From the IMG/VR virus record IMGVR_UViG_3300046787_000408, positions 235,984-299,983 of that record: 64,000 nucleotides of DNA. One strand, given 5' to 3'. Positions 46,074-59,664 of this stretch are shown one piece after another (the first letter of the stretch is position 1; every line of letters begins with the position of its first letter). Under the pieces are notes generated by a model that was given only the letters and a program-made list of their open reading frames with translations, did not search any database and was not told the origin of the DNA. The position numbers and the translations under genes were made by a program.

Positions 46074-46148
46074 GGGCCAATAGCTTAATGGTAAAGCAGT
46101 CGACTCATAATCGATTGAGTCTAAGTTCAATTCTTAGTTGGCCCACCA
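46074..46148 (+). tRNA. tRNA-CAT (probably Ile2, or Met)
   Basis: Cloverleaf; loop CTCATAA; CCA; own sigma70 promoter. Confidence 0.9.
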
Positions 46149-46153
46149 AACAT

Positions 46154-46228
46154 CTGGCGTTCGTATAATGGATAATACACGGGTCTTCTAAGCCCTTTAT
46201 ATAGGTTCGATTCCTGTACGCCGGACCA
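46154..46228 (+). tRNA. tRNA-Arg(TCT)
   Basis: Cloverleaf; loop CTTCTAA; CCA. Confidence 0.85.
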
Positions 46229-46235
46229 CTATAGT

Positions 46236-46272
46236 ATAAATTATTTCAATTACAGCAATAGAAATAATTTCA
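46236..46272 (+). promoter_or_regulatory. OxyR-box-like operator upstream of ahpC
   Basis: ATAA-N7-CAAT-N7-ATAG-N7-TTCA spacing. Confidence 0.4.
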
Positions 46273-46373
46273 GACAAAAACAATGAATCTGCTTGATTTC
46301 ATTGCTATATACTATTACAATAAACACTCAGTATAAACACTGAGACTCAACATTTTAACACAAGGAAATCAAA

Positions 46374-46943
46374 ATGAAAACAGTTGGCGATAAATTGGCC
46401 CCATTCGCAGTCACCGGCGTTCGTCCCGGTCAACCTGAAGATGCGTTTTATACCATCACAGACACCAGCTTTGAAGGCAAGTGGAAAGTAATCGTTTACT
46501 ACCCCAAGGACTTTACATTCGTATGCCCCACAGAAATTGTAGCTTACGACAAGTTGGCACAGGACTTTGCTGATCGTGACGCAGTGTTGCTCACAGGTTC
46601 AACAGACAATGAGTTCTGCAAAGTGGCTTGGCAAAATGCACACGCTGATTTGAAGAAGATCACACACCACCAGTTTGCTGACACACAACGTGCCACCTAC
46701 GATGCTGCAACCAACACAGTAAAGAACCTGAGCTTGATTGAACAATTGGGTGTGTTCTATGCTCCAGCTGGTGCCGCACTTCGTGCCACATTCATTGTTG
46801 ATCCCAACAATGAGATCCAACACGTTACAGTCAACAACTTGAACGTGGGTCGCAGTCCAGAAGAAACACTTCGTGTGTTGGATGCATTGCAAACAGGTGA
46901 ACTGTGTGCTTGCAACCGTACAGTTGGCGGCGAGACACTGTAA
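46374..46943 (+). CDS. ahpC: Peroxiredoxin AhpC
   Basis: YPKDFTFVCPTE; RATFIVDP; GELCAC. Confidence 0.93.
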   Translation: MKTVGDKLAPFAVTGVRPGQPEDAFYTITDTSFEGKWKVIVYYPKDFTFVCPTEIVAYDKLAQDFADRDAVLLTGSTDNEFCKVAWQNAHADLKKITHHQFADTQRATYDAATNTVKNLSLIEQLGVFYAPAGAALRATFIVDPNNEIQHVTVNNLNVGRSPEETLRVLDALQTGELCACNRTVGGETL

Positions 46944-47566
46944 TGTTAGAAACTATATGCGACACATTAGTCGAAGCATATAGCCGCAACTGGATTACCA
47001 GTCGTGATGGCAATGTAAGTATTCGTCATCACGACCGTGATCACTTTTATATCACGCCTAGTGGTGTGCGTAAGCAAACGCTACAGCCTGATCAATTTAA
47101 AAAGATTAGAATTGTAAGTAGTCTTATGTGGACAGAAGAATTCTACACAGACATTAGTGCTAATTTAAAGCCCAGCGGAGAGATTCCCTTGCACTTTGGG
47201 TTACAAAAGAATATGGGTCAGCATAGCAATGATGTTAGGGTAGTAGTTCACTTGCATCCTACATATTGTGTAGCGGCTATGCATCGTGGTATTGAGTTAA
47301 GCAGCCTTGCTGATAGCTTTCCAGAACTCAGTCGTTATACAAGTGTGGCGCCTAACGTAGGAGATGTAGCACCTATCAGTCAAGAACTTGCTGATCGTTG
47401 CCATGAGAACTTGCAGTTAGATAACTACGGAAATATTGCTTATGACATTGTTGGGATCAAAGGTCATGGAGTAGTGGCTATTGACACTAGTCCGTGGCGT
47501 GCGTTTGAGCACATTGAACGATTAGAACATATTTGCCAAATTGTGTTGGCATCAGGAAAATATTAA
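46943..47566 (+). CDS. Class II aldolase/adducin family protein
   Basis: DGNVS, ITPSG, PSGEIPLH, VVHLHP, KGHG. Confidence 0.85.
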   Translation: MLETICDTLVEAYSRNWITSRDGNVSIRHHDRDHFYITPSGVRKQTLQPDQFKKIRIVSSLMWTEEFYTDISANLKPSGEIPLHFGLQKNMGQHSNDVRVVVHLHPTYCVAAMHRGIELSSLADSFPELSRYTSVAPNVGDVAPISQELADRCHENLQLDNYGNIAYDIVGIKGHGVVAIDTSPWRAFEHIERLEHICQIVLASGKY

Positions 47567-47567
47567 C

Positions 47568-47966
47568 ATGTTGGATTGTTTGATCATTGGGGATAGTATT
47601 GCAGTGGGCACACACCAAGCAAGACCCGAGTGTGTGGCCTATGCCAAAGGCGGCTGGAATACCTGGCAATGGAATCGCGAATACTTGAACAAAGATTTGT
47701 CTGCCCGGACAGTTATTATCAGCTTGGGCAGTAACGACCACAAGGGCGTACGAACCCGAGCAGAGTTACAACGTATTCGTGAGAAAGTTGGAACAACTGC
47801 TAGAGTATTTTGGATCTTGCCTGCAATCAATCCAGACATTCAAGCAACAATCAAAAGCATGGCGGCAGAGTACGGAGATTCTGTACTGCCAATGACTCGT
47901 TTACAAAAGGATGGCGTACATCCTAGCTGGGCGGGTTATAAAGAATTAGCGGAGAAAACAAAATGA
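47568..47966 (+). CDS. Small SGNH/GDSL hydrolase
   Basis: IGDS, SLGSND, DGVHP. Confidence 0.75.
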   Translation: MLDCLIIGDSIAVGTHQARPECVAYAKGGWNTWQWNREYLNKDLSARTVIISLGSNDHKGVRTRAELQRIREKVGTTARVFWILPAINPDIQATIKSMAAEYGDSVLPMTRLQKDGVHPSWAGYKELAEKTK

Positions 47967-48478
47967 CAACATGGGTAGATCAACTCAAAGAAACCATCCC
48001 TGACTATGCCAAGGATACTCGACTCAACATTGACGCTGTGATCAAACGTTCGAGCTTGGCTCCTGAATTAGCTGAAGCTATTGCTCTAGCGGCAGCATTT
48101 GCCACAGGCAACACCAAGCTGTGGACCTGGATTCACAGTGTGTTGGCAGACCGCAAAGAAGCTGATGCAGCACTGACCGCTGCCTCAATCATGGCTCAAA
48201 ACAACGTTTGGTATCCATTCGTTGAAATGGCAGATGATCCTGCTTTAGCCGGGTTGCCTGCACAGTTGCGCATGAATGCTATTGCAAGTCATGGTGGAAC
48301 AACCAAGGCCAACTTTGAAGCTTACAGCTTGGCCGCAAGTATTGTGGGCAAGTGCCATTTCTGTGTAAAAGCTCACTATGAGACTTTGAAAGCAGAAGGT
48401 TACACTGTGGAACAACTTCGCGACATTGGACGTATTGCCGCAGTAGTTACCAGCACTGCCCGAGTGTTAGCCAACTAA
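47963..48478 (+). CDS. ahpD: Alkyl hydroperoxide reductase AhpD
   Basis: PDYAKD, MAQNNVWY, CHFCVKAH. Confidence 0.9.
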   Translation: MTTWVDQLKETIPDYAKDTRLNIDAVIKRSSLAPELAEAIALAAAFATGNTKLWTWIHSVLADRKEADAALTAASIMAQNNVWYPFVEMADDPALAGLPAQLRMNAIASHGGTTKANFEAYSLAASIVGKCHFCVKAHYETLKAEGYTVEQLRDIGRIAAVVTSTARVLAN

Positions 48479-48492
48479 AATTAGTAGCTGTC

Positions 48493-49047
48493 ATGATTAG
48501 TTCTAGTCCAGACCGTGGCTGTTTCCAAATTGAGTGCGAACTCAAGCGAGTTGCTGAAGGCGACAAAACTGCTGAAGAAGCAAACGACATGATTGAGTTT
48601 TACCAGTCACATCGAGCACAAATTCGCGAAAAAGAAGCTGACCCTGAATGGCAGAAAAACAACATGGAGTTTGATCTCCGTGCCACAGACTGGATTGTGG
48701 CCAAAGTACGTGCATCTGAAGCTTACGCACAGAATCTGTATGCTGCCATGTGCAATCAGAACTTTCAGAAAAACGAAGTATGGTCTGTGTTGAAAAATCA
48801 AACCTGGGGTGCCAGCTGGCGCTATGCTGGAGGTATTGTTGCTGACATGCGTGGCGAAGGTGACTACATGGACTGGTACTGCTCGGGCATCCAAGGTGAC
48901 GCAGACATCGAAACCATGACTCCTGAGCAGCTGGAACGGCATCAATGGTACAAGGCCAACTTTGTGGGCGAAAGTGTAGTCACCAACGAGATCCGAGAAG
49001 ATCTAAAAAAATTAGGATGGTGGGTGGTAGAAGATGCTGTTGAATAA
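48493..49047 (+). CDS. Hypothetical phage protein
   Basis: YAQNLYAAMCN, SWRYAGG, DYMDWYCSG. Confidence 0.7.
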   Translation: MISSSPDRGCFQIECELKRVAEGDKTAEEANDMIEFYQSHRAQIREKEADPEWQKNNMEFDLRATDWIVAKVRASEAYAQNLYAAMCNQNFQKNEVWSVLKNQTWGASWRYAGGIVADMRGEGDYMDWYCSGIQGDADIETMTPEQLERHQWYKANFVGESVVTNEIREDLKKLGWWVVEDAVE

Positions 49048-50179
49048 TCGTTGTACCTACAACGCTGACAAGTTTGGATTCTACCAGTCTGGTGATATCA
49101 AAACCTACAGCAAAATAGAAGCTATTGAAGCCCAGAAACGAACTGGGCATTTTCCTGAATGGAATTTCAATAGGCCAGTGTTTGACAACATGAATTGGAA
49201 AGTTGAACCTCCTGGACAGTTGTGGGACTATTACAAGGCTCGTGCTAGACAAATACGCGAAAGTTATGACTATTGTGTGTTGTTTTATTCTGGCGGCAGT
49301 GATAGTCATAATATCCTTAACGCATGGCTAGAAGAAGGGTGTCAAATTGACGAAGTAGCAAGTTTTTGTTATTTTGATGCGGCTGGCACCCAATCTTTTA
49401 TGAACAGCGAAGTTGATCAAGTGGCAATTCCCATCATGAAAGAATTGGCCAAGTTTCAAAATATCAAATTCAGACTGATTGATTTTAGCAAGGATATAGT
49501 TGATGCAGTTGATCAGTTCTCCGATGAGTGGAAATATCTAAGCAACTTTCATTGGACGCCAAATTCCAAAACCATCTTGATGTGGCGCAAGCGCATTGAA
49601 GAGTATCGACGCATGATTGACGCTGGTAAAAAAGTTTGTTTTGTTTGGGGATCAGACAAGCCTAAGGTTTTTTACGATGGGAAGTTGTACTTTCAATTTG
49701 TTGATATTATTGACAATTGCATTAGTCCAAAAATGCAACAAGAATACAACAACGGGTTCTTTGATGAATTGTTTTACTGGACTCCTGACATGCCCGAAAT
49801 TGTGGTAAAGCAGGCACACGTGGTAAAACGTTTTGTTGAAACAGTGCATGATCCAGTGTTTTACGAACCAGCTGGTTCTAAAGATGCACACGGTTCCGGG
49901 TATAACAAGGTGTTAAAAACTCATTTGTCGCAGTGGGGACTCAAACAAGTAATATATCCTCGATGGGATCCTACCACGTTTGTTGATGGCAAAAGCCCTA
50001 GTCGTGTGTATAGCATACGCGATACTTGGTTTATCAACGGAAACTTGGACCAGAGCCAGAAGTTCCGAGACTTATCACAAGGATTTTTCTCATCTGTAGA
50101 TCAATACTGGCTGAGTGATACTAGCAATTTTTTAAAAGGAATCAAGGGCAGTGTTTCACCCAAGTACTACCTAGAGTAA
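49034..50179 (+). CDS. PP-loop (adenine nucleotide alpha-hydrolase-like) protein
   Basis: LFYSGGSDS. Confidence 0.6.
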   Translation: MLLNNRCTYNADKFGFYQSGDIKTYSKIEAIEAQKRTGHFPEWNFNRPVFDNMNWKVEPPGQLWDYYKARARQIRESYDYCVLFYSGGSDSHNILNAWLEEGCQIDEVASFCYFDAAGTQSFMNSEVDQVAIPIMKELAKFQNIKFRLIDFSKDIVDAVDQFSDEWKYLSNFHWTPNSKTILMWRKRIEEYRRMIDAGKKVCFVWGSDKPKVFYDGKLYFQFVDIIDNCISPKMQQEYNNGFFDELFYWTPDMPEIVVKQAHVVKRFVETVHDPVFYEPAGSKDAHGSGYNKVLKTHLSQWGLKQVIYPRWDPTTFVDGKSPSRVYSIRDTWFINGNLDQSQKFRDLSQGFFSSVDQYWLSDTSNFLKGIKGSVSPKYYLE

Positions 50180-50196
50180 GAATAATAAATACCAAC

Positions 50197-50376
50197 ATGA
50201 TTATCAACATCCATTTACAAAATACATTGTGGCAAACTCAAACCATACCAGGCCCTGGCTACAACGTCACAGAAATTCTGGACAGCATTGAAAGTGCTCG
50301 TGAGGCTGGTGAGCTGAATTGGTTGTTGTGGGATCAACCCTTACGGCTTGACATACAAGTCGTAGAGCCGCTATAA
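50197..50376 (+). CDS. Small hypothetical protein (59 aa)
   Basis: TAAATA immediately upstream of ATG. Confidence 0.45.
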   Translation: MIINIHLQNTLWQTQTIPGPGYNVTEILDSIESAREAGELNWLLWDQPLRLDIQVVEPL

Positions 50377-50383
50377 TACAAGT

Positions 50384-50878
50384 TATTGCTGTATGAAGCA
50401 AAGAGAAAAGGATTCAAGACGCGGGGGCAGTGCCCGCCAGGTCCACCATAAGGAAGTTTGATGAGTCGTAGTAGTCCATGGTTAAGTAAAGATAGTCCAA
50501 AAACTCTCAAGGAGTTTTATATTGAACTACACCCAGATTGGGTAGAGATTGATGGTCAGTACTTAACTGAGGATAGATGGAACGACATCGAACCAGAGAT
50601 ACTGGTTGCCATGAAGCGAGAATATGTTAAGTGTTCTGAACTTCTTGGTTGGCAAGTTTCTTTATGATGGGCCTGACACAGGATCGATTGGGTCAAGAGT
50701 AACAGAGTGGACAGCACGGCATGCAATCACCGACACAAGATTCTGAATCAAGGCTAGTCTTTGGTAGTAGGAACGACTTGGAAAACGAAGTAAACAAATT
50801 AAACGCAAACGACTCACAGTTCGCATTGGCCGCCTAAACGTAGCCTAGGGTAAGACATACCTCGTAACAGAAACTCAA
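50384..50878 (+). ncRNA. ssrA: Circularly permuted (two-piece) tmRNA: acceptor piece ~50384-50448, coding piece ~50669-50878, tag (A)ANDSQFALAA at 50805-50837
   Basis: CAGGTCC-A-CCA precedes GGGCCTG (7-bp acceptor with G3:U70); GAC plus T-arm; TTGGGTC/GATTCAA and ACAGCA/TGCTGT helix 2; promoter TTGACA-18-TATAAT. Confidence 0.92.
50458..50667 (+). CDS. 69-aa ORF inside the tmRNA intervening segment
   Basis: SD TAAGGA right after the CCA; stop TGA ends one base before GGGCCTG. Confidence 0.55.
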   Translation: MMSRSSPWLSKDSPKTLKEFYIELHPDWVEIDGQYLTEDRWNDIEPEILVAMKREYVKCSELLGWQVSL

Positions 50879-50899
50879 GGGCCCACTTCGGTGGGTTTC
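50879..50899 (+). terminator. Hairpin after tmRNA
   Basis: GCCCAC-TTCG-GTGGGT followed by a short T tract. Confidence 0.55.
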
Positions 50900-50916
50900 C
50901 TACTGAAAGGACTACT

Positions 50917-51537
50917 ATGAAAAAACTACTATTCATTACCGCGTTGTTGGCATCTGCAGTCAACGCACAAACTATCGATAACTGGACTGCATCTGGCGCT
51001 CCAGTAAAAAACAGCACCAACTTGTGCTGGCGCGATGCTAACTGGACTCCGGCTACTGCCCATCCTGATTGCGACGGAGCACTCAAGCCTGCACCGGTCA
51101 AGGCAGTTGCACCTGTTGCAGTACCAGTAACTGTAACTCCAGCAACACCAGCACCTAGGGCGGCTGAAGCTCCCAGGCCCTTGGTAATCAAACACTCGTA
51201 TGCCGCTGACGCATTCTTTGACTTTGATCGTGCTGTGATCCGACCAGAAGGCAAGGCCAAGTTGGACGCCTTGGTTGCACAGATCAGCAAGATCACTTTG
51301 GAAGTCGTGATTGCTGTGGGACACACTGACAGCGTTGGTACAGATGCTTACAATCAAAAGCTAGGCGATCGTAGAGCACAAGCAGTCAAGGCCTACTTGA
51401 TCAGCCGAGGTGTTGAGCGCAATCGTGTGTACACTGAAAGCCGTGGCGAGAAGCAACCTGTAGCAGACAACAAGACTTCTGTGGGCAGGGCCAAGAATCG
51501 CAGGGTGGAAATTGAAGTAATTGGTACTACCAAATAA
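50917..51537 (+). CDS. ompA: OmpA-family protein
   Basis: Signal peptide; FFDFD, GHTDSVG, YNQKLGDRRA, NRRVEI; N-terminal CWRDANWTPATA..CDG. Confidence 0.9.
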   Translation: MKKLLFITALLASAVNAQTIDNWTASGAPVKNSTNLCWRDANWTPATAHPDCDGALKPAPVKAVAPVAVPVTVTPATPAPRAAEAPRPLVIKHSYAADAFFDFDRAVIRPEGKAKLDALVAQISKITLEVVIAVGHTDSVGTDAYNQKLGDRRAQAVKAYLISRGVERNRVYTESRGEKQPVADNKTSVGRAKNRRVEIEVIGTTK

Positions 51538-51544
51538 CACTAAC

Positions 51545-51571
51545 AAAAGCGCCCAAGGGCGCTTTTGTTTT
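51545..51571 (+). terminator. Intrinsic terminator
   Basis: AAAAGCGCCC-AA-GGGCGCTTTT-GTTTT. Confidence 0.8.
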
Positions 51572-51692
51572 GGGCAAAGTCTCAAACTTTCGTGTCAAAC
51601 ATGTGCGCACACGCACATGTTTTGTTAGATAACCACTGTATAATAGCAACATAAACAATCAGTTTATAAATCATTTTTAAAAGGAAAAAATA

Positions 51693-52592
51693 ATGACTAC
51701 AACAATCACCATCAAAGACAAAGCAGTAAACACCACATACCAAAACGTTACTGGATTAACAGGCGGCGCAGGCGTTGATGCAGTATTTGATGTAACCAAA
51801 ACCAACGGAACATATTCTGTTGTGCTCGACAGCTTGGCAGCAAGTGCTGGTACAGGCTATGTGGCTGGCGACACAATCACTCTTGCTGGCACAGCCCTGG
51901 GTGGTACAGTTGCCAACAACTTGATCGTTACAGTTGCCACAGTTGGTGCCGCAGGTAAAATTGCCACATTTGGTGTGGTAGGTACAGGTCGTGTTGGCGA
52001 CGGTACAGTTGACGTTGCGGTTGATGTTACTGGTACCGAAGGCGTTGACACCTACACATTTGGGGGCTCCAGCACAGAATTCACTGTGACCAAGGCCGCA
52101 GACAAGATCACAGCAGCCAGCACCCTGGCTACCAATGTTTCATACACTCTTGAAGATCACGAGCGTGTGGTGTTCACAGACAAGGCCATTGCTTATGATG
52201 CTGACGGTCGTGCAGGTGATGTATATGCATTGTTAGCTGCCGCTTTGGGCACAGCAGATGTTACTGATGCGTATACTGGAATTGGTATCCATCTTGCTGA
52301 CGCTGGTTGGACCAACAAGCAATTGGCAGAAGCCTTGTTGGCCACAGACACTTACAAAACTGATGCTGGCGGCGTAAGCACAGAAACTTTCATCAAGCAC
52401 GTTTACAAAAACGTCACAGGTACTGACGCTACATTAGCTGATGTTACCGAACTTACCAATTGGATGAACGGTAACCAGTACAGCCAAGCTGATGTGTTGG
52501 TGATTGCTAGCGAGTTGGCCAGCTTTGAAACTGCTATTGGCTTGACTGGTCTTGCCACTACAGGCATTGACTACACGCCATTTGTTGCCTAA
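51693..52592 (+). CDS. Thr/Gly/Ala-rich protein with C-terminal DUF4214/S-layer-like domain
   Basis: LAEALL...STETFIKHVYKNVTG; SD AAGGA. Confidence 0.6.
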   Translation: MTTTITIKDKAVNTTYQNVTGLTGGAGVDAVFDVTKTNGTYSVVLDSLAASAGTGYVAGDTITLAGTALGGTVANNLIVTVATVGAAGKIATFGVVGTGRVGDGTVDVAVDVTGTEGVDTYTFGGSSTEFTVTKAADKITAASTLATNVSYTLEDHERVVFTDKAIAYDADGRAGDVYALLAAALGTADVTDAYTGIGIHLADAGWTNKQLAEALLATDTYKTDAGGVSTETFIKHVYKNVTGTDATLADVTELTNWMNGNQYSQADVLVIASELASFETAIGLTGLATTGIDYTPFVA

Positions 52593-52651
52593 ATTGACAA
52601 AAAGAGCAACAAAATATTTGACTTTTGTTGCTCTGTCATATATACTACACT

Positions 52652-52750
52652 ATGATGACAGCAATCGCAATCACGTTTAAAAACATACCTGCCAATTATG
52701 AGCAGGCCTATGAGCGCGATTGTATCTCGGGGCTTTGTCGTTGTAGTTAA
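52652..52750 (+). CDS. Leader peptide 1 (MMTAIAITFKNIPANYEQAYERDCISGLCRCS)
   Basis: ATG at the predicted +1 of TTGACT-17-TATACT (52618-52646); stop lies in the loop of the antiterminator hairpin. Confidence 0.6.
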   Translation: MMTAIAITFKNIPANYEQAYERDCISGLCRCS

Positions 52751-52800
52751 CAAAAGTACTACATTCTACAAAGACCCGCACATGATGCGGGTTTTTCTTT
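52728..52800 (+). terminator. Attenuator 1 (antiterminator/terminator)
   Basis: CGGGGCTTTGT/ACAAAGACCCG and TGTAGT/ACTACA versus ACCCGCA-CATGA-TGCGGGT-TTTTCTTT. Confidence 0.7.
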
Positions 52801-52806
52801 ATGTAC

Positions 52807-53029
52807 TAGACCAATAATTGAAAGAGTGTTACAATAGAAACAAGTTAGAGATACAGCGAAGTTTGCAAAGACCCTACAGTGATGCGGGGCTTTTGCAAAA
52901 CAAGTTGACCAGTATTGCACATCGTGTTATACTAGAGGCTAGTTAGGAAGAACAACAACTGCTCCGGAAACGGTAGCACTGCTAGAAGACACAGAAGCAG
53001 TTGACAAATATTCCCAACAGTGTTATAAT
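52807..53029 (+). promoter_or_regulatory. Three tandem sigma70-like promoters
   Basis: TAGACC-17-TACAAT, TTGACC-17-TATACT, TTGACA-17-TATAAT. Confidence 0.75.
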
Positions 53030-53380
53030 AAACACTTAGCAACAAACGATCGAGTAGTTGCGTAGAATTCCTTAAAAATTTACATGTATGATTACCCGGC
53101 AAGACAACACTTGACACGATTTTGATGTTCGGTGATAACAGTCCGTAATGCTGTGAAGCAAAACGTAGCCGGGGATCATATAAAAATGCACATTAGTTAG
53201 AAAGTCCAGCTAAGTTGAGCGTCCCCTGTAAAACGGGGAAAGAGCTAGAATTGCAGGTTAGTATTGCTTTTGTGTGTTTTTATATGATTTTTGATGCACT
53301 ACTTGCCTGAGCGAAAAACTCGTGGTAAACTACAAGAGACAGAGGGTTCGAATCCCTGGGACTGGTAGTGTGTCTTTTAT

Positions 53381-53455
53381 ACTGGGTTCGTCTATCGGTT
53401 AGGACATCAGGTTTTCAACCTGAGAAGACGGGTTCGACTCCCGTACCCAGTACCA
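53381..53455 (+). tRNA. tRNA-Glu(TTC)
   Basis: Cloverleaf; loop TTTTCAA; CCA. Confidence 0.9.
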
Positions 53456-53519
53456 AGTTTATGAGTTCGTCTAGAAACCGGTAAATTGTAGTTTAGTCTA
53501 CAAGCTCGTAATTGATCAT

Positions 53520-53594
53520 GGTGCGTTCATATAATGGTCATTATCCTGGATTGTCTATCCAGAGACGGGAGTTCGATTCTCCCACGCATCGCCA
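53520..53594 (+). tRNA. tRNA-Asp(GTC)
   Basis: Cloverleaf; loop TTGTCTA; GCCA. Confidence 0.9.
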
Positions 53595-53601
53595 AGTTAC
53601 T

Positions 53602-53690
53602 GGATCTTGTTCCCCATTGCCGGCTGTAACCCGGTAGGCATTGTCAAGTGGGGTGGTTGCCAAGTAGTTCGATTCTATCAAGATCCACCA
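53602..53690 (+). ncRNA. Non-canonical tRNA-Tyr(GTA)-like RNA
   Basis: 8-bp acceptor GGATCTTG/CAAGATCC, 4-bp T stem, ACCA; GCCGG-CTGTAAC-CCGGT arm; no normal D arm. Confidence 0.55.
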
Positions 53691-53766
53691 GTTTTATAGG
53701 AGAGTCGCTGCGAAGCGAATTCTTAAACGACCCGTAGAACTCCCGGGCGTCCTGTAGTTAGTATAT

Positions 53767-53851
53767 GGAGAATCCGCCGCAATGGTGTGGCAGGGGACTG
53801 TAAATCCTCCGACTTAGGTCATGACTGGTTCGATCCCAGTATTCTCCACCA
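53767..53851 (+). tRNA. tRNA-Tyr(GTA)
   Basis: Cloverleaf with variable arm; loop CTGTAAA. Confidence 0.9.
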
Positions 53852-53857
53852 ATTTTT

Positions 53858-53997
53858 GTGGTAAGTTTGGTTGACAGGCTATTTGACTGTATGCGTAGCA
53901 GGATTGCAAACCCGAGGGGCATATGGCGATGGGAAGTGATATCACCCGTTTGTAAAAACAGATAGCTAGGCAGGTTCGAATCCTGTTTACTACACCA
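53858..53997 (+). ncRNA. Expanded (140 nt) tRNA-like RNA with Cys(GCA)-like loop
   Basis: GTGGTAA/TTACTAC acceptor, GCAGG-TTCGAAT-CCTGT T arm, ACCA; internal TTGCAAA loop. Confidence 0.5.
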
Positions 53998-54099
53998 AGT
54001 TTATGTCTGGGTCTGACATGGTGTTTCTGATGCGATTGATCACGCAAAGGAGAATGTGGCTCGATACCACGCCCGGCGCCAAATACTAAGGCAATAACA

Positions 54100-54282
54100 A
54101 GTACTAGAGTAGATGGAAACCGACCCATGCGAGACTGCGTGGGCTTCACACTTAGAATGTGACGATGCGAAAGTAAGTCGGTCCAGTAGGGTAAGGAAAA
54201 GTGTTGCTGGCGGAAAAAGCTGCTACCAGACAGAAGTTAAGCGGGCCTAGGCTGACAGTTTAACGCCGTGTACTCTGGAACT
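54100..54282 (+). ncRNA. Orphan structured RNA
   Basis: Closing stem CTAGAGTA/TACTCTGG; internal ACCGAC/GTCGGT and CCCATGC/GCGTGGG. Confidence 0.4.
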
Positions 54283-54351
54283 AATTTATGCTCTATTAGC
54301 TCAATTGGGAGAGGAAAGTAGAGCACGGACTAAATATAGTAGAGGTCTACT

Positions 54352-54741
54352 ATGTTAAAAATTTTTAAATGTCTTTACTGTCAAAAAGAAAATCCGTGCA
54401 AAAAGAATCACATGCACAAGTACTGCAATAATATGTGTCAGAGATTGCACAGCATTACCGAAGCGATGAATGGTGATTCTCCCACTAAAGGAGTTGCACA
54501 AAACTATATGCGGAAATTTGTTGAATACAAATGTGTACATTGTGGAATAGGTTCTGAGTACAACGATAAACCTATAACATTGCAAATTGATCATATTAAT
54601 GGAGTTCGGACTGATCACAGAAAAGTAAATCTGCGATGGTTATGCCCGAATTGTCATTCCCAAACTGAGACTTGGGGATATAAGAATGTTTCAGATGAAG
54701 GTAAACGCAAAATACAACTTGCGTTAAACGGTAAGAAATAG
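54352..54741 (+). CDS. HNH endonuclease (free-standing, homing-type)
   Basis: CVHC...LQIDHING...NLRWLCPNCHSQT; AT-rich; inside the tRNA array. Confidence 0.9.
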   Translation: MLKIFKCLYCQKENPCKKNHMHKYCNNMCQRLHSITEAMNGDSPTKGVAQNYMRKFVEYKCVHCGIGSEYNDKPITLQIDHINGVRTDHRKVNLRWLCPNCHSQTETWGYKNVSDEGKRKIQLALNGKK

Positions 54742-54815
54742 GTCTCAAAGTGTTCATGGACGCACACAACACTGTCACTGTTGAAGAAGGGGATCGTTAC
54801 CCCTTGAGACCGCCA
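54741..54815 (+). tRNA. tRNA-Asp(GTC), second copy
   Basis: Loop CTGTCAC; atypical T loop ATCGTTA. Confidence 0.85.
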
Positions 54816-54822
54816 AGTTAAT

Positions 54823-54900
54823 GGGCGATGACTGTTGTAAAGGATAACAGGCGGCAGTAACTCTGCCGTGACAGTGGTTCGATTCCACTATCGTCCACCA
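54823..54900 (+). ncRNA. tRNA-like RNA with Ala-type acceptor (G3:U70, A73)
   Basis: GGGCGAT/ATCGTCC-A-CCA; T arm AGTGG-TTCGATT-CCACT; 7-bp arm with 5-nt loop instead of a normal anticodon arm. Confidence 0.6.
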
Positions 54901-54907
54901 TGAATAT

Positions 54908-55016
54908 GGGTTGTCAAGGAAGGTCACATGCACGGTGAGTAGCCGTAGGAGCATTATCGAGTGTGCGCCACCGCACTCTTGGTCAGACATGGGTTCAAGT
55001 CCCATACAATCCACCA
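54908..55016 (+). ncRNA. 109-nt tRNA-like RNA with Ala-type acceptor
   Basis: GGGTTGT/ACAATCC-A-CCA; GAC plus ATGGG-TTCAAGT-CCCAT. Confidence 0.55.
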
Positions 55017-55020
55017 AGTT

Positions 55021-55242
55021 TTGTTGTAGTGTTAGCAAGTGAAGTCACGCTAGCGAGGTTTCTTCGAAGGACCGAGTCAGTAGAAGGTTGCGGGTTCGAT
55101 GCCCGACTGGTCGCTTGAGTGGGACTGGTATACATGATGGCGTATCAACTGGATGAATCTCAAGTAACGTACCGAGTCCTAGCCCGGGCTATATGCAAAT
55201 AGGTGAATGGTGTCAATAACGATGGTGACACTACTGCAACAA
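55021..55242 (+). ncRNA. Orphan structured RNA
   Basis: Closing stem GTAGTGTTA/TGACACTAC; internal T-loop hairpin CGGG-TTCGATG-CCCG. Confidence 0.4.
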
Positions 55243-55251
55243 ATTCAACAT

Positions 55252-55326
55252 GTCGCATTAGACTTCTGGTGAGGTCATCACCCTTTCAAGGTGACCAGAC
55301 GGGATCGTAACCCGTATGCGACTCCA
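55252..55326 (+). tRNA. tRNA-Glu(TTC), second copy
   Basis: Loop CTTTCAA; T loop ATCGTAA. Confidence 0.85.
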
Positions 55327-55421
55327 TTGATAAACACACTTACAGATCCGCCCGAGTAGTAAGGGAGACAGCGACTAACCGTTGAAGGACTGTTTAAAAG
55401 TGTGTTTTTCAATGGAACAAT

Positions 55422-55513
55422 GCCCCTATAGTTTAATGGTAAAACGGCGGATTTATATCCCGTAAGCAACAGATAATTGGTTCATCTGGGTTCAATTCCC
55501 GGTGGGGGTACCA
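55422..55513 (+). tRNA. tRNA-Ile(TAT) with long variable region
   Basis: Loop TTTATAT; ~22-nt variable region; ACCA. Confidence 0.7.
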
Positions 55514-55520
55514 AAAAGTT

Positions 55521-55708
55521 AAGCTGGCCTGCCTGCGTCTAAAACTCAATGACGATGGGCCCAACTACCAGGGACTCCAGTTGATCCACTGCCTCTGGGG
55601 ATTAAGTTGCCATGACTGCTAGTCACAGTCGAACCATGTTGGTGGAAGGAAGGGAGTGCAGTGATGTATTCCGTACCTTTAAACGCAGGGTAGTAGGCGG
55701 ATCAGTTT
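55521..55708 (+). ncRNA. Orphan ~190-nt rod-like RNA (6S-like size and shape, unverified)
   Basis: CCTGCGTCTAAA/TTTAAACGCAGG closing helix. Confidence 0.35.
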
Positions 55709-55783
55709 ATCCAATTTGTGTTGACAAGCAATGTTGTTTGTCATACAATAGATACTTAGACAGTAACAAAAGTCTTTAAACAC

Positions 55784-55876
55784 ATGCACATCAAGGCGCC
55801 GTACACGCCGATGATATGTGGTATTCAGCACTGCCACTGGCAGTGTGAGGCAGGTTCGAATCCTGTATAGTGTGCA
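55784..55876 (+). ncRNA. tRNA-like RNA without CCA, with its own promoter
   Basis: TGCACAT/GTGTGCA stem; GCAGG-TTCGAAT-CCTGT; promoter TTGACA-17-TACAAT (55721-55749). Confidence 0.4.
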
Positions 55877-55939
55877 GTTGTTTACAGATTTGGTAAAATT
55901 AGTTGTTGACAAGTTCAACAATTGATGTTACAATAAGAT

Positions 55940-56828
55940 TCCGGGGCAGTTTAATGTCCTACTAGGTAGCTTGCTATCTAGTGAAGAATAAGCTGAGTGA
56001 TCAGCCCAAAGGAGGTATGCCTACATAACTCCGCCAGCAATGGTTCGTTTAGACAAGCCTGCTCAGACTCGCGAGAGTCCCTTTACTGATAAGACCGGTG
56101 GAGGTAACAATGACGCTGGATGTTGTGGAAAGAACGTTTGCTTACCGGCCCGCAAGGGTAACCGGAGCAGATGGAAAGTAACAGGTGGTGCTGACTTCAC
56201 AACTAAACCAGTCCAGTTAATTGGTATGAGAAAGGGTAGTGTATTTGTCCGAGGTGTTGCAACCAAGGGCTCGTATGCAGTTTGAGTGGTTGGTGGATTG
56301 GCAGCAATGTCAAGACGCAGATCGCAAAAGACGACTGAGTAGTTCGCAAGACGAAAGGTACGTGGTGTGTTGTATTGTGTATTCCAAAAGAGTATGCAGC
56401 AACTGAGTCAGCACATCGCAGTAGGTTGTTATAAGCTAATGGTAAGCTAACTCCCTGTTAAGGAGTCGACTGCGGGTTCAACTCCCGCTAACGATTAAAA
56501 TGCAAAGACTGACTCGGTCGTATGTGAAAAGCATCTAATACTTGAGGCGCAAGCTAATCAAGTCAGACGTAACTCGCAAGGTGAAATCTGTTTATGCTGG
56601 AAGTTTCGTAAGGTGTTAGCGCACTTGAATGGCTCGCAAGGTCAACGGGATAGATGGCGTAGAATAGCATACGGCGACAAGACTACTGCCTGTCTTTAAA
56701 AACGGCGATGCTGATAGCAGACATGGATACCTGGCAACAGGGCTGTGTGGAAGTCGAGAGAAAGCTGGCTCGCAAGGCTGGTAATAATGCTCGAGGTGCT
56801 ATTGGGAGAGATGTATTCTCAGTCCTCC
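55940..56828 (+). ncRNA. GOLLD-like large ornate RNA
   Basis: ~890 nt without a credible ORF; promoter TTGACA-17-TACAAT (55906-55934); at least six CGCAAG-capped hairpins; lies in a phage tRNA array; contains an embedded tRNA. Confidence 0.75.
56425..56495 (+). tRNA. tRNA-Asn(GTT)-like domain embedded in the large RNA (no CCA)
   Basis: GTTGTTA/TAACGAT; AGCT-AATGGTA-AGCT; ACTCC-CTGTTAA-GGAGT; GCGGG-TTCAACT-CCCGC. Confidence 0.75.
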
Positions 56829-56933
56829 ACTATTCTAAAACACATTACATGCACAATGGGTAGACATGGTAGTATTGCTTGTGATACAGCAGTATAACGC
56901 TGTGGTAGTGTATTTCAGAATGGTAAATAATTG

Positions 56934-57007
56934 CGCGGGTAGGGTGGTCACCACACCGGTCTCATAAGCCAGGTGCATCGGCAGTTCAAATCTGTCACCC
57001 GCATCCA
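56934..57007 (+). tRNA. tRNA-fMet-like (CAT), degenerate D arm
   Basis: C1:A72 mismatch; loop CTCATAA; CCA. Confidence 0.65.
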
Positions 57008-57139
57008 AATTCGTAGTTTTTCAGCATGTGGTATAAATACAACACTGAAAAACATTTAGTGGTTGACAACAATCACTAAGTAAAGTATAATTAACACTTG
57101 AACAGCAACAAAGCTGTTTGAGTAACCCAAGGAAACAAA

Positions 57140-57271
57140 ATGACTTCTATTACTTGTTCACTGTTAACCAAACAAATGCTCCAGGCGACACAAACCTGGT
57201 CGCACGCCTTTGGTCGCGTGAATAGTATTCCGGGAGTCTCAGGGTCTTGTGAAGGTGGTGGTTACGCATAA
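57140..57271 (+). CDS. Leader peptide 2 (MTSITCSLLTKQMLQATQTWSHAFGRVNSIPGVSGSCEGGGYA)
   Basis: Promoter TTGACA-17-TATAAT (57063-57091); SD AAGGA; stop in the antiterminator loop. Confidence 0.7.
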   Translation: MTSITCSLLTKQMLQATQTWSHAFGRVNSIPGVSGSCEGGGYA

Positions 57272-57329
57272 TAGCAGTAACTAACAAACTCAAAAGACCC
57301 TGGAACTAAAAACTCCAGGGTTTTTCTTT
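57240..57329 (+). terminator. Attenuator 2 (antiterminator/terminator)
   Basis: CAGGGTCTT/AAGACCCTG and GGTTAC/GTAACT versus CCCTGGA/TCCAGGG-TTTTTCTTT. Confidence 0.75.
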
Positions 57330-57511
57330 ATGTGTAATGAGTAACGAGGACTCAGCCAGCACACTAAACTAGGCAAACGGGCGGACAGGACACATGAACG
57401 TGTGGTGAGAACACACTAGTAAGACTCCTGGTCGGGGTATCAACCCCGTCATGTGGTGTAGCAATACACTGCATTCTAAAACACACTTGCTGAGTATGTT
57501 TTAGAATGTAT

Positions 57512-57586
57512 GGGCTGTTAGTGATAGTGGTAGCACAGTGGCTTTGCAAGCCTCGGGCAGGAGTTCGATTCTCCTACGGTCCACCA
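57512..57586 (+). tRNA. tRNA-Ala(TGC)
   Basis: G3:U70; loop TTTGCAA. Confidence 0.88.
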
Positions 57587-57595
57587 TATGTTAAT

Positions 57596-57670
57596 GTATC
57601 TCTGGTGTAATGGCAGCATCGCGGATTCCAAATCCGTTAGGTCAGGGTTCGAGTCCTTGGGGGTACGCCA
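57596..57670 (+). tRNA. tRNA-Trp(CCA)
   Basis: Loop TTCCAAA; G73. Confidence 0.9.
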
Positions 57671-57678
57671 ATTTTTGT

Positions 57679-57752
57679 TCGGGAATGGTGTAGAGGTAAC
57701 ACAACAGACTTTGACTCTGTCGTCCCTGGTTCGATCCCAGGTTCCCGTGCCA
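57679..57752 (+). tRNA. tRNA-Gln(TTG)
   Basis: Loop CTTTGAC. Confidence 0.9.
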
Positions 57753-57760
57753 GTTTTTGT

Positions 57761-57836
57761 GGGGGTATAGCTCATCTGGTAGAGCAGGTGCTTTGCAAGC
57801 ATCAGGTGGCAGGTTCGAGTCCTGTTGCCTCCACCA
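57761..57836 (+). tRNA. tRNA-Ala(TGC), second copy
   Basis: Canonical cloverleaf. Confidence 0.93.
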
Positions 57837-57837
57837 T

Positions 57838-57912
57838 AGCCGTGTAGCTCAGAGGAAGAGCGCTGTCTTGATAAGGCATAGGTCGACATTTCGAAATTGT
57901 CCATGGCTACCA
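57838..57912 (+). tRNA. tRNA-Ile(GAT)
   Basis: Loop TTGATAA. Confidence 0.85.
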
Positions 57913-57920
57913 ATTTTTAT

Positions 57921-57999
57921 TCCGAGAAACTCGAGCAAGGTGCATGAGCTTGACTGTTAATCAATGGTTAGGTGGGTTCGATTCCCACACTCGGAGCCA
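57921..57999 (+). tRNA. tRNA-Asn(GTT)
   Basis: Loop CTGTTAA; atypical D arm. Confidence 0.8.
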
Positions 58000-58041
58000 A
58001 TTTTTTTGTAGTAGGCGAGAGTGCCTACTAAGTAGTTTACT

Positions 58042-58131
58042 GGTGCGGTCCTATAATGGTATTAGAGCAGATTGCTAATCTGTCGCTCGGCGTAATCCGG
58101 GTTCTGAGTTCGAGTCTCAGTCGCACCGCCA
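58042..58131 (+). tRNA. tRNA-Ser(GCT)
   Basis: Loop TTGCTAA; long variable arm. Confidence 0.9.
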
Positions 58132-58139
58132 GACAACAT

Positions 58140-58215
<76 letters not shown>

Positions 58216-58222
58216 TGTTTGT

Positions 58223-58297
58223 TCCTCGATAGCTCAGTGGTAGAGTGCCGGACTGTTAATCCGTTGGTCCCTGGTTCGAGCCCAGGTCGAGGAGCCA
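58223..58297 (+). tRNA. tRNA-Asn(GTT), second copy
   Basis: Canonical cloverleaf. Confidence 0.92.
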
Positions 58298-58304
58298 TAA
58301 TTTA

Positions 58305-58379
58305 GCCCTTGTATCCTTAGTGGTAGAGGTCCTGTTTTGTAAGCAGGGTGTGGTGGTTCGATTCCATCCTGGGGCACCA
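58305..58379 (+). tRNA. tRNA-Thr(TGT)
   Basis: Loop TTTGTAA. Confidence 0.85.
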
Positions 58380-58434
58380 CAAACATAGTCAATACTCTCC
58401 CTTGACGAGCTAGGTCACTAGACTATTTTCTTTC

Positions 58435-58508
58435 GCCCTATTAGTATAATGGTATTACACCTGTTTTGTAATCAGGTTACGGCAGTTCGATTCTGTCATG
58501 GGGCACCA
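58435..58508 (+). tRNA. tRNA-Thr(TGT), second copy
   Basis: Loop TTTGTAA. Confidence 0.88.
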
Positions 58509-58559
58509 CTTTCAAGCCTATACTCAATCCTGCCGTGACGACTGTCCCTGGGCTTTTAT

Positions 58560-59663: not shown

Positions 59664-59664
59664 C

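What the first reader, a model, noticed from the sequence alone, without database searches (positions are those of the whole stretch)
50348..50899. Permuted two-piece tmRNA whose intervening segment carries a 69-aa ORF
Seen: the 3' acceptor piece (CCA at 50446-48) precedes the 5' coding piece (50669), with G3:U70 and tag ANDSQFALAA. The 220-nt intervening segment is closed by TAAGGAAGTTTG/CAAGTTTCTTTA and filled end to end by an ORF with its own SD. Established: permuted tmRNAs occur in alphaproteobacteria and some beta- and cyanobacteria, usually with short non-coding spacers. Inference: the excised spacer may be a stem-protected mini-mRNA produced in step with tmRNA.
Basis: partly seen in the sequence, partly recalled or inferred. 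Interest (0 to 1): 0.68.

Follow-up and report, generated by a model that had tools for sequence, protein, structure and literature searches.

The report
Protein gene nested inside phage tmRNA
A giant phage's two-piece ribosome-rescue RNA (tmRNA) gene carries a real 68-residue protein gene in the spacer that is cut out during RNA maturation, and in related phage tmRNA genes the same spacer holds at least 31 unrelated small proteins, so it works as a previously undescribed gene slot.

Summary
Window 50348-50899 is one transcription unit. It has a 12/12 sigma-70 promoter, a permuted tmRNA (Rfam RF04321, 97.4 bits), encoded CCA at 50446-48, G1 at 50669, a G3:U70 pair, the tag ANDSQFALAA and a terminator hairpin.

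The 220-nt intervening sequence (IVS) is filled by an ORF (ATG 50461 to TGA 50667). It is 68 aa long, not 69. The ORF is a real gene:
- 15 further metagenomic loci carry it in the same place.
- dN/dS is 0.08-0.3, and variable sites by codon position run 19/9/27.
- One indel is in frame.
- A 48%-identical homologue stands free, just upstream of another permuted tmRNA.

The main result goes beyond the finding. In 148 related phage tmRNA loci the IVS runs from 25 to 491 nt. Of 65 distinct IVSs of 120 nt or more, 59 hold one slot-filling ORF. The 61 distinct cargo ORFs fall into 31 unrelated families, including a thioredoxin and a DUF2061 protein. Near-identical tmRNA backbones carry different cargo or none. 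The closing stem covaries across these loci.

ORF68's biochemical function is unknown, with no sequence or fold relatives. Expression could not be tested. I found no prior description of this arrangement.

The parts
50348..50377 (+). Promoter: TTGACA, 18-nt spacer, TATAAT
   Evidence: 12 of 12 consensus positions. The tmRNA model starts 10 nt downstream at 50387.
50387..50448 (+). tmRNA acceptor (3') piece. Its 5' strand pairs with the coding piece. It holds the T-arm (50421-50437), the 3' acceptor strand (50438-50444), discriminator A (50445) and encoded CCA (50446-50448).
   Evidence: Rfam alignments. The T-loop GGCAGUG matches the alphaproteobacterial tmRNA consensus GGCgGUA.
50449..50668 (+). 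Intervening sequence (IVS), 220 nt, removed when the two pieces mature
   Evidence: It lies between the encoded CCA and G1. Its ends are conserved in 148 related loci.
50449..50460 (+). 5' strand of the closing stem (TAAGGAAGTTTG), containing the Shine-Dalgarno sequence AAGGAAG (50450-50456)
   Evidence: It pairs with 50653-50664. Within the ORF68 loci 93% of cells pair. Across 117 IVSs there are 65 distinct 5' strands, and each pairs better with its own partner (10.9 of 12) than with others (8.7 of 12).
50461..50667 (+). ORF68: a 68-aa acidic protein of unknown function, and the cargo gene of the IVS
   Evidence: Homologues at 78-100% identity sit at the same place in 15 further loci. dN/dS is 0.08-0.3 and variable sites by codon position are 19/9/27. 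One indel is in frame. A free-standing 48%-identical homologue is in L010. AlphaFold2 pLDDT is 82.7.
50653..50664 (+). 3' strand of the closing stem (CAAGTTTCTTTA). It doubles as the last four codons, Q-V-S-L.
   Evidence: Unrelated cargo ORFs end in VSL or VFL for the same reason.
50665..50668 (+). TGAT: the ORF's stop codon plus one base, lying opposite ACCA in the precursor helix just before the expected RNase P site
   Evidence: 42 of 61 distinct cargo ORFs stop at this TGA, 1 nt before G1. RNase P cleavage at this site is inferred from tRNA and tmRNA biology, not tested.
50669..50879 (+). tmRNA coding (5') piece: 5' acceptor strand GGGCCTG (50669-50675), D-loop analogue, and the body with the tag frame
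   Evidence: Rfam RF04321 and RF01849 alignments.
50805..50837 (+). Tag reading frame: GCA resume codon to TAA, encoding ANDSQFALAA
   Evidence: Direct reading and a script. It aligns to the tag region of the Rfam model.
50880..50899 (+). Terminator-like hairpin (CCCAC-TTCG-GTGGG followed by TTTCC)
   Evidence: Direct reading, and folded in the minimum-free-energy structure. Relatives have a GC hairpin followed by T-runs at the same place. The T-run here is too short for the scan to list it.

Best explanation
Window 50348-50899 is a phage-borne permuted (two-piece) tmRNA gene whose excised spacer serves as a slot for a small protein-coding gene. Here the cargo is ORF68, a 68-aa acidic protein of unknown function.

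Shown:
- The tmRNA gene is intact.
- ORF68 is a protein-coding gene under purifying selection.
- The spacer is bounded by a covarying closing stem. Its 5' strand supplies the Shine-Dalgarno sequence. Its 3' strand supplies the last codons, with the UGA stop 1 nt before G1.
- In related phage tmRNA genes the same slot holds at least 31 unrelated cargo families, or only a short hairpin.
- Near-identical tmRNA backbones carry different cargo.

Inferred:
- One transcript starts from the consensus promoter.
- Ribosomes load on the SD just after the CCA and translate the cargo, on the nascent or unprocessed precursor and possibly on the excised 220-nt RNA.
- RNase P at G1 and 3' trimming to CCA then release the two tmRNA pieces, which pair and use the host's SmpB.
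- The spacer is a safe harbour, because it is discarded from the mature RNA.
- The strongly conserved tmRNA sequences on both sides let homologous recombination between co-infecting phages swap the cargo.
For: - tmRNA: RF04321 at 97.4 bits, with G3:U70, encoded CCA, tag ANDSQFALAA and a 12/12 promoter.
- ORF68 is coding. Five protein clusters of 68-69 aa share 78-96% identity. In every locus with enough DNA it lies inside a permuted tmRNA. Variable sites by codon position are 19/9/27, and dN/dS is 0.08-0.3 for diverged pairs. The 3-nt indel is in frame. The homologue P0006 (E 4e-15) stands outside any IVS with its own SD, 45 nt upstream of a permuted tmRNA whose IVS is 72 nt.
- Slot: 148 loci and 117 distinct IVSs of 25-491 nt. 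59 of 65 IVSs of 120 nt or more hold one filling ORF, against 0.9% of shuffles. The cargo falls into 31 blastp families.
- Cargo with curated Pfam hits: thioredoxin 75.4 bits, DUF2061 72.6 bits, CxxCxxCC 26.6 bits. Each lies inside an Rfam-confirmed tmRNA. ARAGORN also calls the tmRNA around the DUF2061 cargo.
- dN/dS is 0.05-0.33 in eight other cargo families.
- Swap: L007 (ORF68) and L306 (thioredoxin) are identical up to the start codon and about 96% identical from the last four codons onward. Three further backbone pairs at 94-97% identity differ in cargo or have none.
- Mosaicism: ORF68 nucleotide identity is 79-100% while tmRNA bodies fall to background. The window and L011 share 99% in the ORF but have different T-arm classes. 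The upstream protein of L009 is 33% identical to the window's, yet the tmRNA plus ORF is about 95% identical.
- Closing stem: 10.9 of 12 pairs with its own partner against 8.7 with others.
Against: - There is no transcript, ribosome-footprint or peptide evidence.
- Processing at CCA and G1 is assumed by analogy with bacterial two-piece tmRNA.
- The closing stem is weak, and the predicted SD accessibility is ambiguous: about 0.5 unpaired in the excised RNA and lower in a truncated nascent RNA. The timing of translation is therefore guesswork.
- Within the ORF68 loci alone the stem shows no double compensatory change.
- All loci come from metagenomes. No cultured phage in GenBank carries ORF68 or two of the other cargo-bearing tmRNA genes.
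- The survey was seeded with this group's own acceptor stem and IVS 3' end, so its breadth outside the group is unknown.
- ORF68 has no recognisable function.
Confidence: 0.75

Rival explanations
1. ORF68 is a dedicated accessory factor of the phage tmRNA. It might modulate SmpB, release factors, tag-directed proteolysis or tmRNA stability, and it sits in the IVS so that it is made in a fixed ratio to the RNA.
For: The family is linked to permuted tmRNA in two different arrangements: inside the IVS in 16 loci, and immediately upstream in L010. In L010 the next gene is a truncated RF1-like protein with PxT and GGQ motifs. The phage itself and a complete 364-kb relative lack SmpB, so the tmRNA has to work with the host's SmpB.
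Against: The same slot carries 30 other unrelated cargo families, including thioredoxin and membrane peptides, and one backbone carries either ORF68 or thioredoxin. Position in the slot therefore does not imply a tmRNA-related function. ORF68 is acidic (net charge about -5), unlike ArfA, BrfA or the SmpB tail, and matches no ribosome-rescue family. The single free-standing example lies in a region of small genes, and linkage there may be incidental.
Confidence: 0.12
2. The ORF is not translated. The 220-nt IVS is conserved as a structured RNA, for example a processing scaffold or a by-product sRNA, and the open frame is incidental.
For: The IVS folds better than shuffles (z = -3.5). ORF68 DNA is unusually conserved, with low dS in many pairs. 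Its ends are RNA elements.
Against: Substitutions concentrate at third codon positions, and dN/dS is well below 1. The indel is in frame. A 48%-identical protein homologue exists outside any IVS with its own SD. Sister cargo includes bona fide thioredoxin and DUF2061 domains. 59 of 65 long IVSs keep a filling ORF, against 0.9% of shuffles.
Confidence: 0.05
3. The IVS-ORF unit is a selfish mobile element, homing-like, in the way endonuclease genes sit in group I introns of tRNA and tmRNA genes. On this view ORF68 promotes its own spread between tmRNA genes.
For: ORF68 is far more conserved than the tmRNA around it. It occurs with three T-arm classes, including alpha-type and beta-type tRNA-like domains. 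The exchange boundaries are sharp.
Against: The protein is 68 aa, has no nuclease motif and matches no family. The cargo is 31 unrelated families, among them thioredoxin and 26-40-aa membrane peptides that cannot all be homing enzymes. There is no intron signal in the window at E <= 0.001. Sharp boundaries are what ordinary homologous recombination produces when anchored on the conserved tmRNA flanks.
Confidence: 0.05
4. The arrangement is an assembly or binning artefact, with chimeric contigs joining halves of a tmRNA gene around an unrelated gene.
For: All the data are metagenomic.
Against: The same architecture recurs with base-level precision in independent assemblies from JGI, ENA, Logan and IMG/VR. 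These include a complete 364-kb genome with terminal repeats.
Confidence: 0.01

Closest known systems
Permuted (two-piece) tmRNA genes of Alphaproteobacteria, some Betaproteobacteria, cyanobacteria and marine/aquatic phages (Keiler, Shapiro and Williams 2000 and Sharkady and Williams 2004, cited from my own knowledge; PMC11915505; PMC9004378)
   Same: Acceptor piece before coding piece, an encoded CCA, a G:U third pair, a tag frame, and an IVS removed by tRNA-processing enzymes. Phage copies are already known: 53 of 133 phage tmRNA structures were two-piece in PMC9004378.
   Different: Described IVSs are short and non-coding. The database paper reports only a tRNA-Ala gene and a repetitive element as unusual IVS contents. 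Here the IVS holds a complete translatable gene, and across relatives it holds an interchangeable set of them.
Homing-endonuclease genes inside group I introns of tmRNA and tRNA genes
   Same: A protein gene is nested in a segment that is removed from a stable RNA, so the host RNA stays functional. This is known for the tmRNA T-loop (PMC11915505).
   Different: There is no intron here. Removal is by end-processing of a permuted gene, not splicing (no intron hit). The cargo is not endonucleases but diverse small proteins.
ORF-bearing intervening sequences of 23S rRNA (S23p / PF05635 proteins in Leptospira and Coxiella; from my own knowledge)
   Same: An excised spacer of a fragmented stable RNA carries a small ORF and is closed by a stem that is cut during maturation.
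   Different: The host RNA and the processing enzyme differ (RNase III there). That case involves one protein family. ORF68 has no PF05635 match.
PeSL cassettes of T4-type phages: promoter-early/stem-loop motifs flanking small shuffled ORFs (Arbiol, Comeau and Krisch 2010; from my own knowledge)
   Same: Small genes of unknown function are bracketed by conserved regulatory sequence. That sequence both drives expression and serves as homology for modular exchange between phages.
   Different: Here the bracketing sequence is the two halves of an essential-looking RNA gene, and the cargo sits inside that gene's transcript.
ArfA/BrfA: small rescue factors made from truncated mRNAs and controlled by tmRNA tagging (from my own knowledge)
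   Same: The product is a protein of about 70 aa. After processing, its message would end at or just past the stop codon, so tmRNA could compete with release factor.
   Different: No sequence similarity. ORF68 is acidic where those factors are basic. Any regulatory link is pure inference.

Membership tests
Permuted tmRNA (Rfam RF04321) | Covariance-model score above the curated cut-off over the whole tRNA-like domain | tested here: met
   97.4 bits against a cut-off of 47, model positions 1-213.
Permuted tmRNA (Rfam RF04321) | Gene order: acceptor (3') piece, then IVS, then coding (5') piece, on one strand | tested here: met
   CCA at 50446-48 lies upstream of G1 at 50669.
Permuted tmRNA (Rfam RF04321) | Seven-pair acceptor stem with G3:U70 (the alanine identity element) and a 3' CCA | tested here: met
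   GGGCCUG pairs with CAGGUCC. All seven pairs, including U:G, are invariant in 12 loci.
Permuted tmRNA (Rfam RF04321) | Tag reading frame that starts at an Ala resume codon and ends in a hydrophobic C-terminus plus a stop | tested here: met
   GCA 50805 to TAA 50837 encodes ANDSQFALAA.
Permuted tmRNA (Rfam RF04321) | Precursor is cleaved into two RNAs that stay paired | not testable with these tools
   No read data could be obtained. The minimum-free-energy fold pairs the expected strands.
Permuted tmRNA (Rfam RF04321) | An SmpB partner is available | tested here: inconclusive
   No PF01668 match in the 300 kb held (81% complete) or in the complete 364-kb relative. Host SmpB is presumed, and the host is unknown.
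Alphaproteobacterial-type tmRNA (RF01849) | Score above the cut-off; GGCRGUR T-loop and AGGAUCGA D-loop analogue | tested here: met
   55.9 bits against a cut-off of 50. T-loop GGCAGUG matches consensus GGCgGUA. The score is marginal, the tag looks betaproteobacterial, and sister loci score as beta_tmRNA.
Group I intron with homing-endonuclease gene | Intron catalytic core around the ORF; the ORF is a nuclease | tested here: not met
   No intron family at E <= 0.001 in the window. ORF68 has no Pfam, PHROG or NCBIfam hit.
23S rRNA IVS protein (PF05635) | Pfam PF05635 four-helix-bundle match | tested here: not met
   Not listed at E <= 0.1. The predicted fold is three helices plus a hairpin.
ArfA/BrfA-type alternative rescue factors | Sequence family match and a basic C-terminal tail that enters the mRNA channel | tested here: not met
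   No family match. By my count from the sequence there are 8 basic and 13 acidic residues.
DUF3658 (a lead from the protein-language-model search) | Pfam PF12395 match | tested here: not met
   Feature score 0.87 only. Not listed by hmmscan at E <= 0.1.

The most novel reading that the evidence does not exclude
The spacer of phage two-piece tmRNA genes may be a dedicated, exchangeable gene-cassette platform in which cargo expression is mechanically coupled to tmRNA maturation and activity. The SD lies in the closing stem. In 42 of 61 cargo ORFs the stop codon lies 1 nt from the RNase P site. The excised RNA would then be a near-non-stop message, and its product would be tagged by the very tmRNA it came from, giving ArfA-like feedback. 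A ribosome sitting on the stop codon would also delay formation of the acceptor stem.
Probability: 0.15. Interest if true: 0.9.

Novelty: new variant of a known kind. Interest (0 to 1): 0.78.

Why it matters
tmRNA genes are annotated as purely non-coding. Permuted ones are thought to discard a short, meaningless spacer. This locus and its relatives show that phages use that spacer as real coding space, with the RNA gene's own stem providing the ribosome-binding site and the stop codon.

That has three consequences:
- It adds a new way of nesting a protein gene inside a stable-RNA gene, beside intron-borne endonucleases and rRNA IVS ORFs.
- It gives a defined, easily searched address for dozens of unknown small phage proteins, which are hard to find and to believe in otherwise.
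- It offers a compact natural system, about 550 bp, for studying how translation and RNA processing compete on one transcript, and how conserved RNA genes anchor cargo exchange between phages.

It also warns annotators that a CDS call inside a tmRNA gene need not be a false positive.

Tried and rejected
- Function of ORF68 by sequence. Pfam, PHROGs and NCBIfam gave nothing significant. A word-index search found only close homologues. A full HMMER pass over 1.8 billion representatives added one 68-aa relative plus a probably spurious 2084-aa hit. That relative is a singleton.
- Function by fold. The AlphaFold2 model is good (pLDDT 82.7). Foldseek against the PDB found nothing at E <= 0.001. The VIA-align wide search gave a best Z of 3.7, with scattered HMG-box rows at Z 2.5-3.5 that I do not trust for an acidic protein. 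The ESM Atlas gave TM <= 0.51, and BFVD gave nothing. The language-model lead to DUF3658 (0.87) is not backed by hmmscan.
- Binding to SmpB. One complex-prediction job with Dechloromonas SmpB returned no verdict (score 0.00). This is not evidence either way. A first attempt failed because the reference name is not held.
- Bacterial origin. No relative of ORF68 was found in 185,579 species genomes. L009, which looked bacterial (TctC and porin neighbours), is a related phage: its upstream gene is a 33% homologue of the window's, and the window's phage has its own TctC gene.
- Host inference. A T-arm/acceptor pattern in bacterial genomes hit tRNA-like sequences in many phyla and was uninformative.
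- Cultured relatives. There are no blastn or tblastn matches in 50,697 GenBank phage records for the window's gene, ORF68 or two other cargo-bearing tmRNAs. The L010 tmRNA gave one short, irrelevant hit.
- Non-canonical T-loop. I first took it for an oddity. It is the normal alphaproteobacterial tmRNA T-loop.
- 'ARAGORN cannot see long IVSs'. Rejected: it calls the 220-nt-IVS gene in L147, although it misses the window's gene.
- SD sequestration as an on/off switch. The partition-function numbers are ambiguous.
- Two classic papers (PMC516066, PMC16621) are not held.
Full report
**Setting**

The window is the last 64 kb of a 299,983-bp IMG/VR virus record that is 81% complete. It is a jumbo phage. 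Between 46 and 61 kb it has 38 tRNA genes, and it has a GOLLD RNA at 56362-56825. The finding lies in this RNA-gene region. Upstream is a 381-aa protein with a PP-loop-like SGGSDS motif (49034-50179). Downstream is a secreted OmpA-domain protein (50917-51537; Pfam OmpA at 79.8 bits).

- Rfam's tmRNA_permuted model matches 50387-50837 at 97.4 bits (cut-off 47). The alphaproteobacterial model matches 50344-50879 at 55.9 bits (cut-off 50). ARAGORN did not call the gene.
- The acceptor piece ends in an encoded CCA at 50446-48, and the coding piece begins at G 50669.
- The acceptor stem is GGGCCUG/CAGGUCC, with G:U as its third pair.
- The tag frame 50805-50837 reads ANDSQFALAA.
- A perfect TTGACA-18-TATAAT promoter sits at 50348-50377.
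- A GC hairpin closes the unit at 50880-50899.
- The T-loop GGCAGUG looked aberrant but is the normal alphaproteobacterial tmRNA T-loop (consensus GGCgGUA).
- Neither this phage nor a complete 364-kb relative encodes SmpB, so the host's SmpB is presumably used.

The intervening sequence (IVS) is 50449-50668, 220 nt. Its first and last 12 nt pair with each other: 9 Watson-Crick and 3 G:U pairs. This helix is continuous with the acceptor stem across an ACCA/UGAU internal loop. The ORF runs from ATG 50461 to TGA 50667. AAGGAAG lies 4 nt upstream of the ATG, and the stop codon ends 1 nt before G1. The 69-aa reading starts at TTG 50458, which is TTA in several homologues. The conserved product is therefore 68 aa.

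**ORF68 is a gene**

- A search of 5.8 billion proteins found five clusters of 68-69 aa at 78-96% identity.
- IMG/VR and JGI metagenome scans added more.
- In every locus with enough flanking DNA (L002, L003, L005-L007, L009, L011-L014) the ORF lies inside a permuted tmRNA.
- Variable sites fall 19/9/27 on codon positions 1/2/3, and Nei-Gojobori dN/dS is 0.08-0.3 for the more diverged pairs.
- The only length change is an in-frame codon.
- A natural CAA-to-TAA change in L012 removes only the last four residues, which the closing stem dictates.
- A full HMMER pass over 1.8 billion representatives found one distant relative, P0006 (68 aa, E 4e-15, 48% identity).
- P0006 lies in L010 outside any IVS. 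It has its own SD, sits 45 nt upstream of a permuted tmRNA whose IVS is only 72 nt, and directly follows a 164-aa RF1-like gene with PxT and GGQ motifs.
- A protein family that exists both free-standing and nested cannot be an RNA-structure artefact.

**ORF68 is better conserved than the RNA gene around it**

- Across ten full loci the ORF is 79-100% identical in DNA. The tmRNA bodies fall to 46-70%, which is the level of unrelated flanks.
- The T-arms come in three classes: alpha-type, canonical beta-type and a UGCGAAU type. The tags also differ: ANDSQFALAA, ANDSVFALAA, ANDESFALAA, ANDEVYALAA, and long tags of 20-30 residues.
- The window and L011 share 99% of the ORF but have different T-arm, D-loop and body.
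- L013 and L014 are 99-100% identical upstream and through the ORF, and unrelated after the tRNA-like domain.
- L009 has the window's whole tmRNA gene at about 95% identity, yet its syntenic upstream protein is only 33% identical.
- The unit, and parts of it, are therefore exchanged between rather distant phages.

**The general pattern**

I searched IMG/VR for this group's acceptor strands separated by 205-235 nt. Scripts recovered 148 loci with both pieces, giving 117 distinct IVSs of 25-491 nt.

- The 52 IVSs shorter than 120 nt are simple hairpins. Two of them hold a 26-aa ORF.
- Of the 65 IVSs of 120 nt or more, 59 contain one ORF that starts 9-23 nt after the CCA and ends no more than 15 nt before G1. 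Four more contain two tandem membrane-peptide ORFs.
- Shuffling the interiors keeps such an ORF in 0.9% of trials.
- The 61 distinct cargo ORFs (26-151 aa) fall into 31 blastp families.
- Three cargoes pass curated Pfam thresholds: a CGPC thioredoxin (75.4 bits), DUF2061 (72.6 bits) and a CxxCxxCC metal-binding domain (26.6 bits). Each lies inside an Rfam-confirmed tmRNA. ARAGORN independently calls the permuted tmRNA around the DUF2061 cargo.
- Eight other families with at least two diverged members show dN/dS of 0.05-0.33.
- 42 of the 61 stop at the UGA 1 nt before G1. They read through the stem's 3' strand, which explains the recurrent VSL and VFL C-termini. Seventeen stop at a UAA or UAG that opens that strand.
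- The closing stem now shows covariation. There are 65 distinct 5' strands, and each pairs with its own 3' strand at 10.9 of 12 positions against 8.7 with others. On the variable positions the figures are 7.9 and 5.7 of 9.

**Direct cargo swaps**

L007 (ORF68) and L306 (thioredoxin) have tmRNA genes that are identical from the 5' end to the start codon and about 96% identical from the last four codons to the tag stop. Only the interior differs. Three further backbone pairs show the same thing:

| Backbone pair | Coding-piece identity | IVS contents |
|---|---|---|
| L257 / L276 | 96% | 38-aa cargo vs a 62-nt hairpin |
| L259 / L309 | 94% | 62-aa cargo vs a 68-nt hairpin |
| L264 / L284 | 97% | 38-aa cargo vs a 26-aa cargo |

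Single cargo families sit in up to four T-arm types, and a single T-arm type hosts up to 15 cargo families.

**Comparison with bacteria and with the literature**

In 151 alphaproteobacterial genomes, 148 have a match to the same model. Full-model matches are 181-343 nt long, against 451 nt here. One of those genomes, G042, is unpublished; nothing here depends on it. The eight longest have IVSs of 48-133 nt with no slot-filling ORF. I therefore say 'not found in those searched', not 'absent'.

Phage two-piece tmRNAs are known (PMC9004378). The 2025 tmRNA database paper lists a tRNA-Ala gene and a repeat element as unusual IVS contents, and endonuclease genes only in group I introns (PMC11915505). 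Full-text searches found no report of protein genes in permuted-tmRNA spacers. No GenBank phage matches.

**How it most likely works**

Shown: the parts and their conservation, as described above.

Inferred:
- The consensus promoter makes one precursor.
- The SD directly after the CCA recruits ribosomes, and the cargo is translated up to the UGA that abuts G1.
- RNase P and 3' trimming then free the two tmRNA pieces and a 220-nt by-product.

Whether translation happens mainly on the nascent precursor or on the excised RNA cannot be decided. The stem is weak (-6.5 kcal/mol as a duplex), and predicted SD accessibility is about 0.5 in the excised RNA.

The spacer is a safe harbour because it is discarded from the mature RNA. 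The conserved tmRNA halves give homology for exchange between phages.

ORF68's own role is unknown. It is acidic, is predicted as three helices plus a hairpin (pLDDT 82.7), and has no sequence or fold relatives. A tmRNA-related role is suggested only by the L010 linkage, and the diversity of sister cargo weakens that suggestion. An SmpB complex prediction gave no verdict.

**Limits**

- There are no expression data.
- All loci are metagenomic, and the host is unknown. The tags resemble betaproteobacterial ANDExxALAA tags (my own knowledge), and the phage carries TctC-like genes.

Noticed in passing
window 56362-56825 (+): A GOLLD RNA (Rfam RF02032, 192.6 bits) has a tRNA-Asn gene (56424-56497) embedded in its 5' part. 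It sits in the middle of the phage's tRNA array.
   Followed up: no
window 46074-61298 (+): There are 38 tRNA genes on one strand covering most anticodon families. Rfam calls one more at 59208-59282 that ARAGORN does not list. tRNA-Ile(tat) at 55422-55513 is 92 nt long, which suggests a long insert or an intron.
   Followed up: no
L010:2476-2970 (+): A 164-aa truncated RF1-like protein aligns to RF1 residues 171-333 and keeps the PxT and GGQ motifs but lacks domain 1. It lies directly upstream of the free-standing ORF68 homologue and a permuted tmRNA. The complete relative G002 also has one RF-1-domain ORF (187 aa) at 221 kb.
   Followed up: partly
L010:1443-1640 (+): A sub-threshold match to archaeal RNase P RNA (RF00373, 42.3 bits against a cut-off of 84, E 1e-9) lies about 1 kb upstream of the tmRNA on a phage-like contig. 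Nothing comparable occurs in the window at E <= 0.001.
   Followed up: partly
L151, L183, L228, L330 (IVS 214-256 nt): Some tmRNA spacers hold two tandem hydrophobic mini-ORFs (36 aa plus 25-35 aa) instead of one cargo. The 36-aa peptide recurs in contigs of 98-364 kb.
   Followed up: partly
L006, L007, L264, L276, L284 tag regions: Several of these phage tmRNAs encode unusually long tags of 23-31 residues, for example ANADTFDFSAMSFTGNTVRGAANESRFVLAA. Near-identical genomes (L013 vs L014, L006 vs L007) differ sharply in tag and tmRNA body.
   Followed up: partly
window 50438-50675 versus L003, L006, L011: The same acceptor stem and the same cargo are combined with alpha-type, beta-type and a third type of T-arm and D-loop. 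The tRNA-like domains of these phage tmRNAs are therefore themselves mosaic. The bacterial alpha and beta permuted lineages are thought to have arisen independently (my own knowledge).
   Followed up: partly
window 50197-50376 (+): A 59-aa ORF ends inside the tmRNA promoter (its stop overlaps the -10 hexamer). It has no family match and was not tested for conservation.
   Followed up: no
window 50917-51537 (+); G000:C1:209820-210689: The phage encodes a signal-peptide OmpA-domain protein right after the tmRNA terminator, and TctC-like solute-binding proteins elsewhere. Related contigs carry porin-like genes next to their tmRNA.
   Followed up: partly
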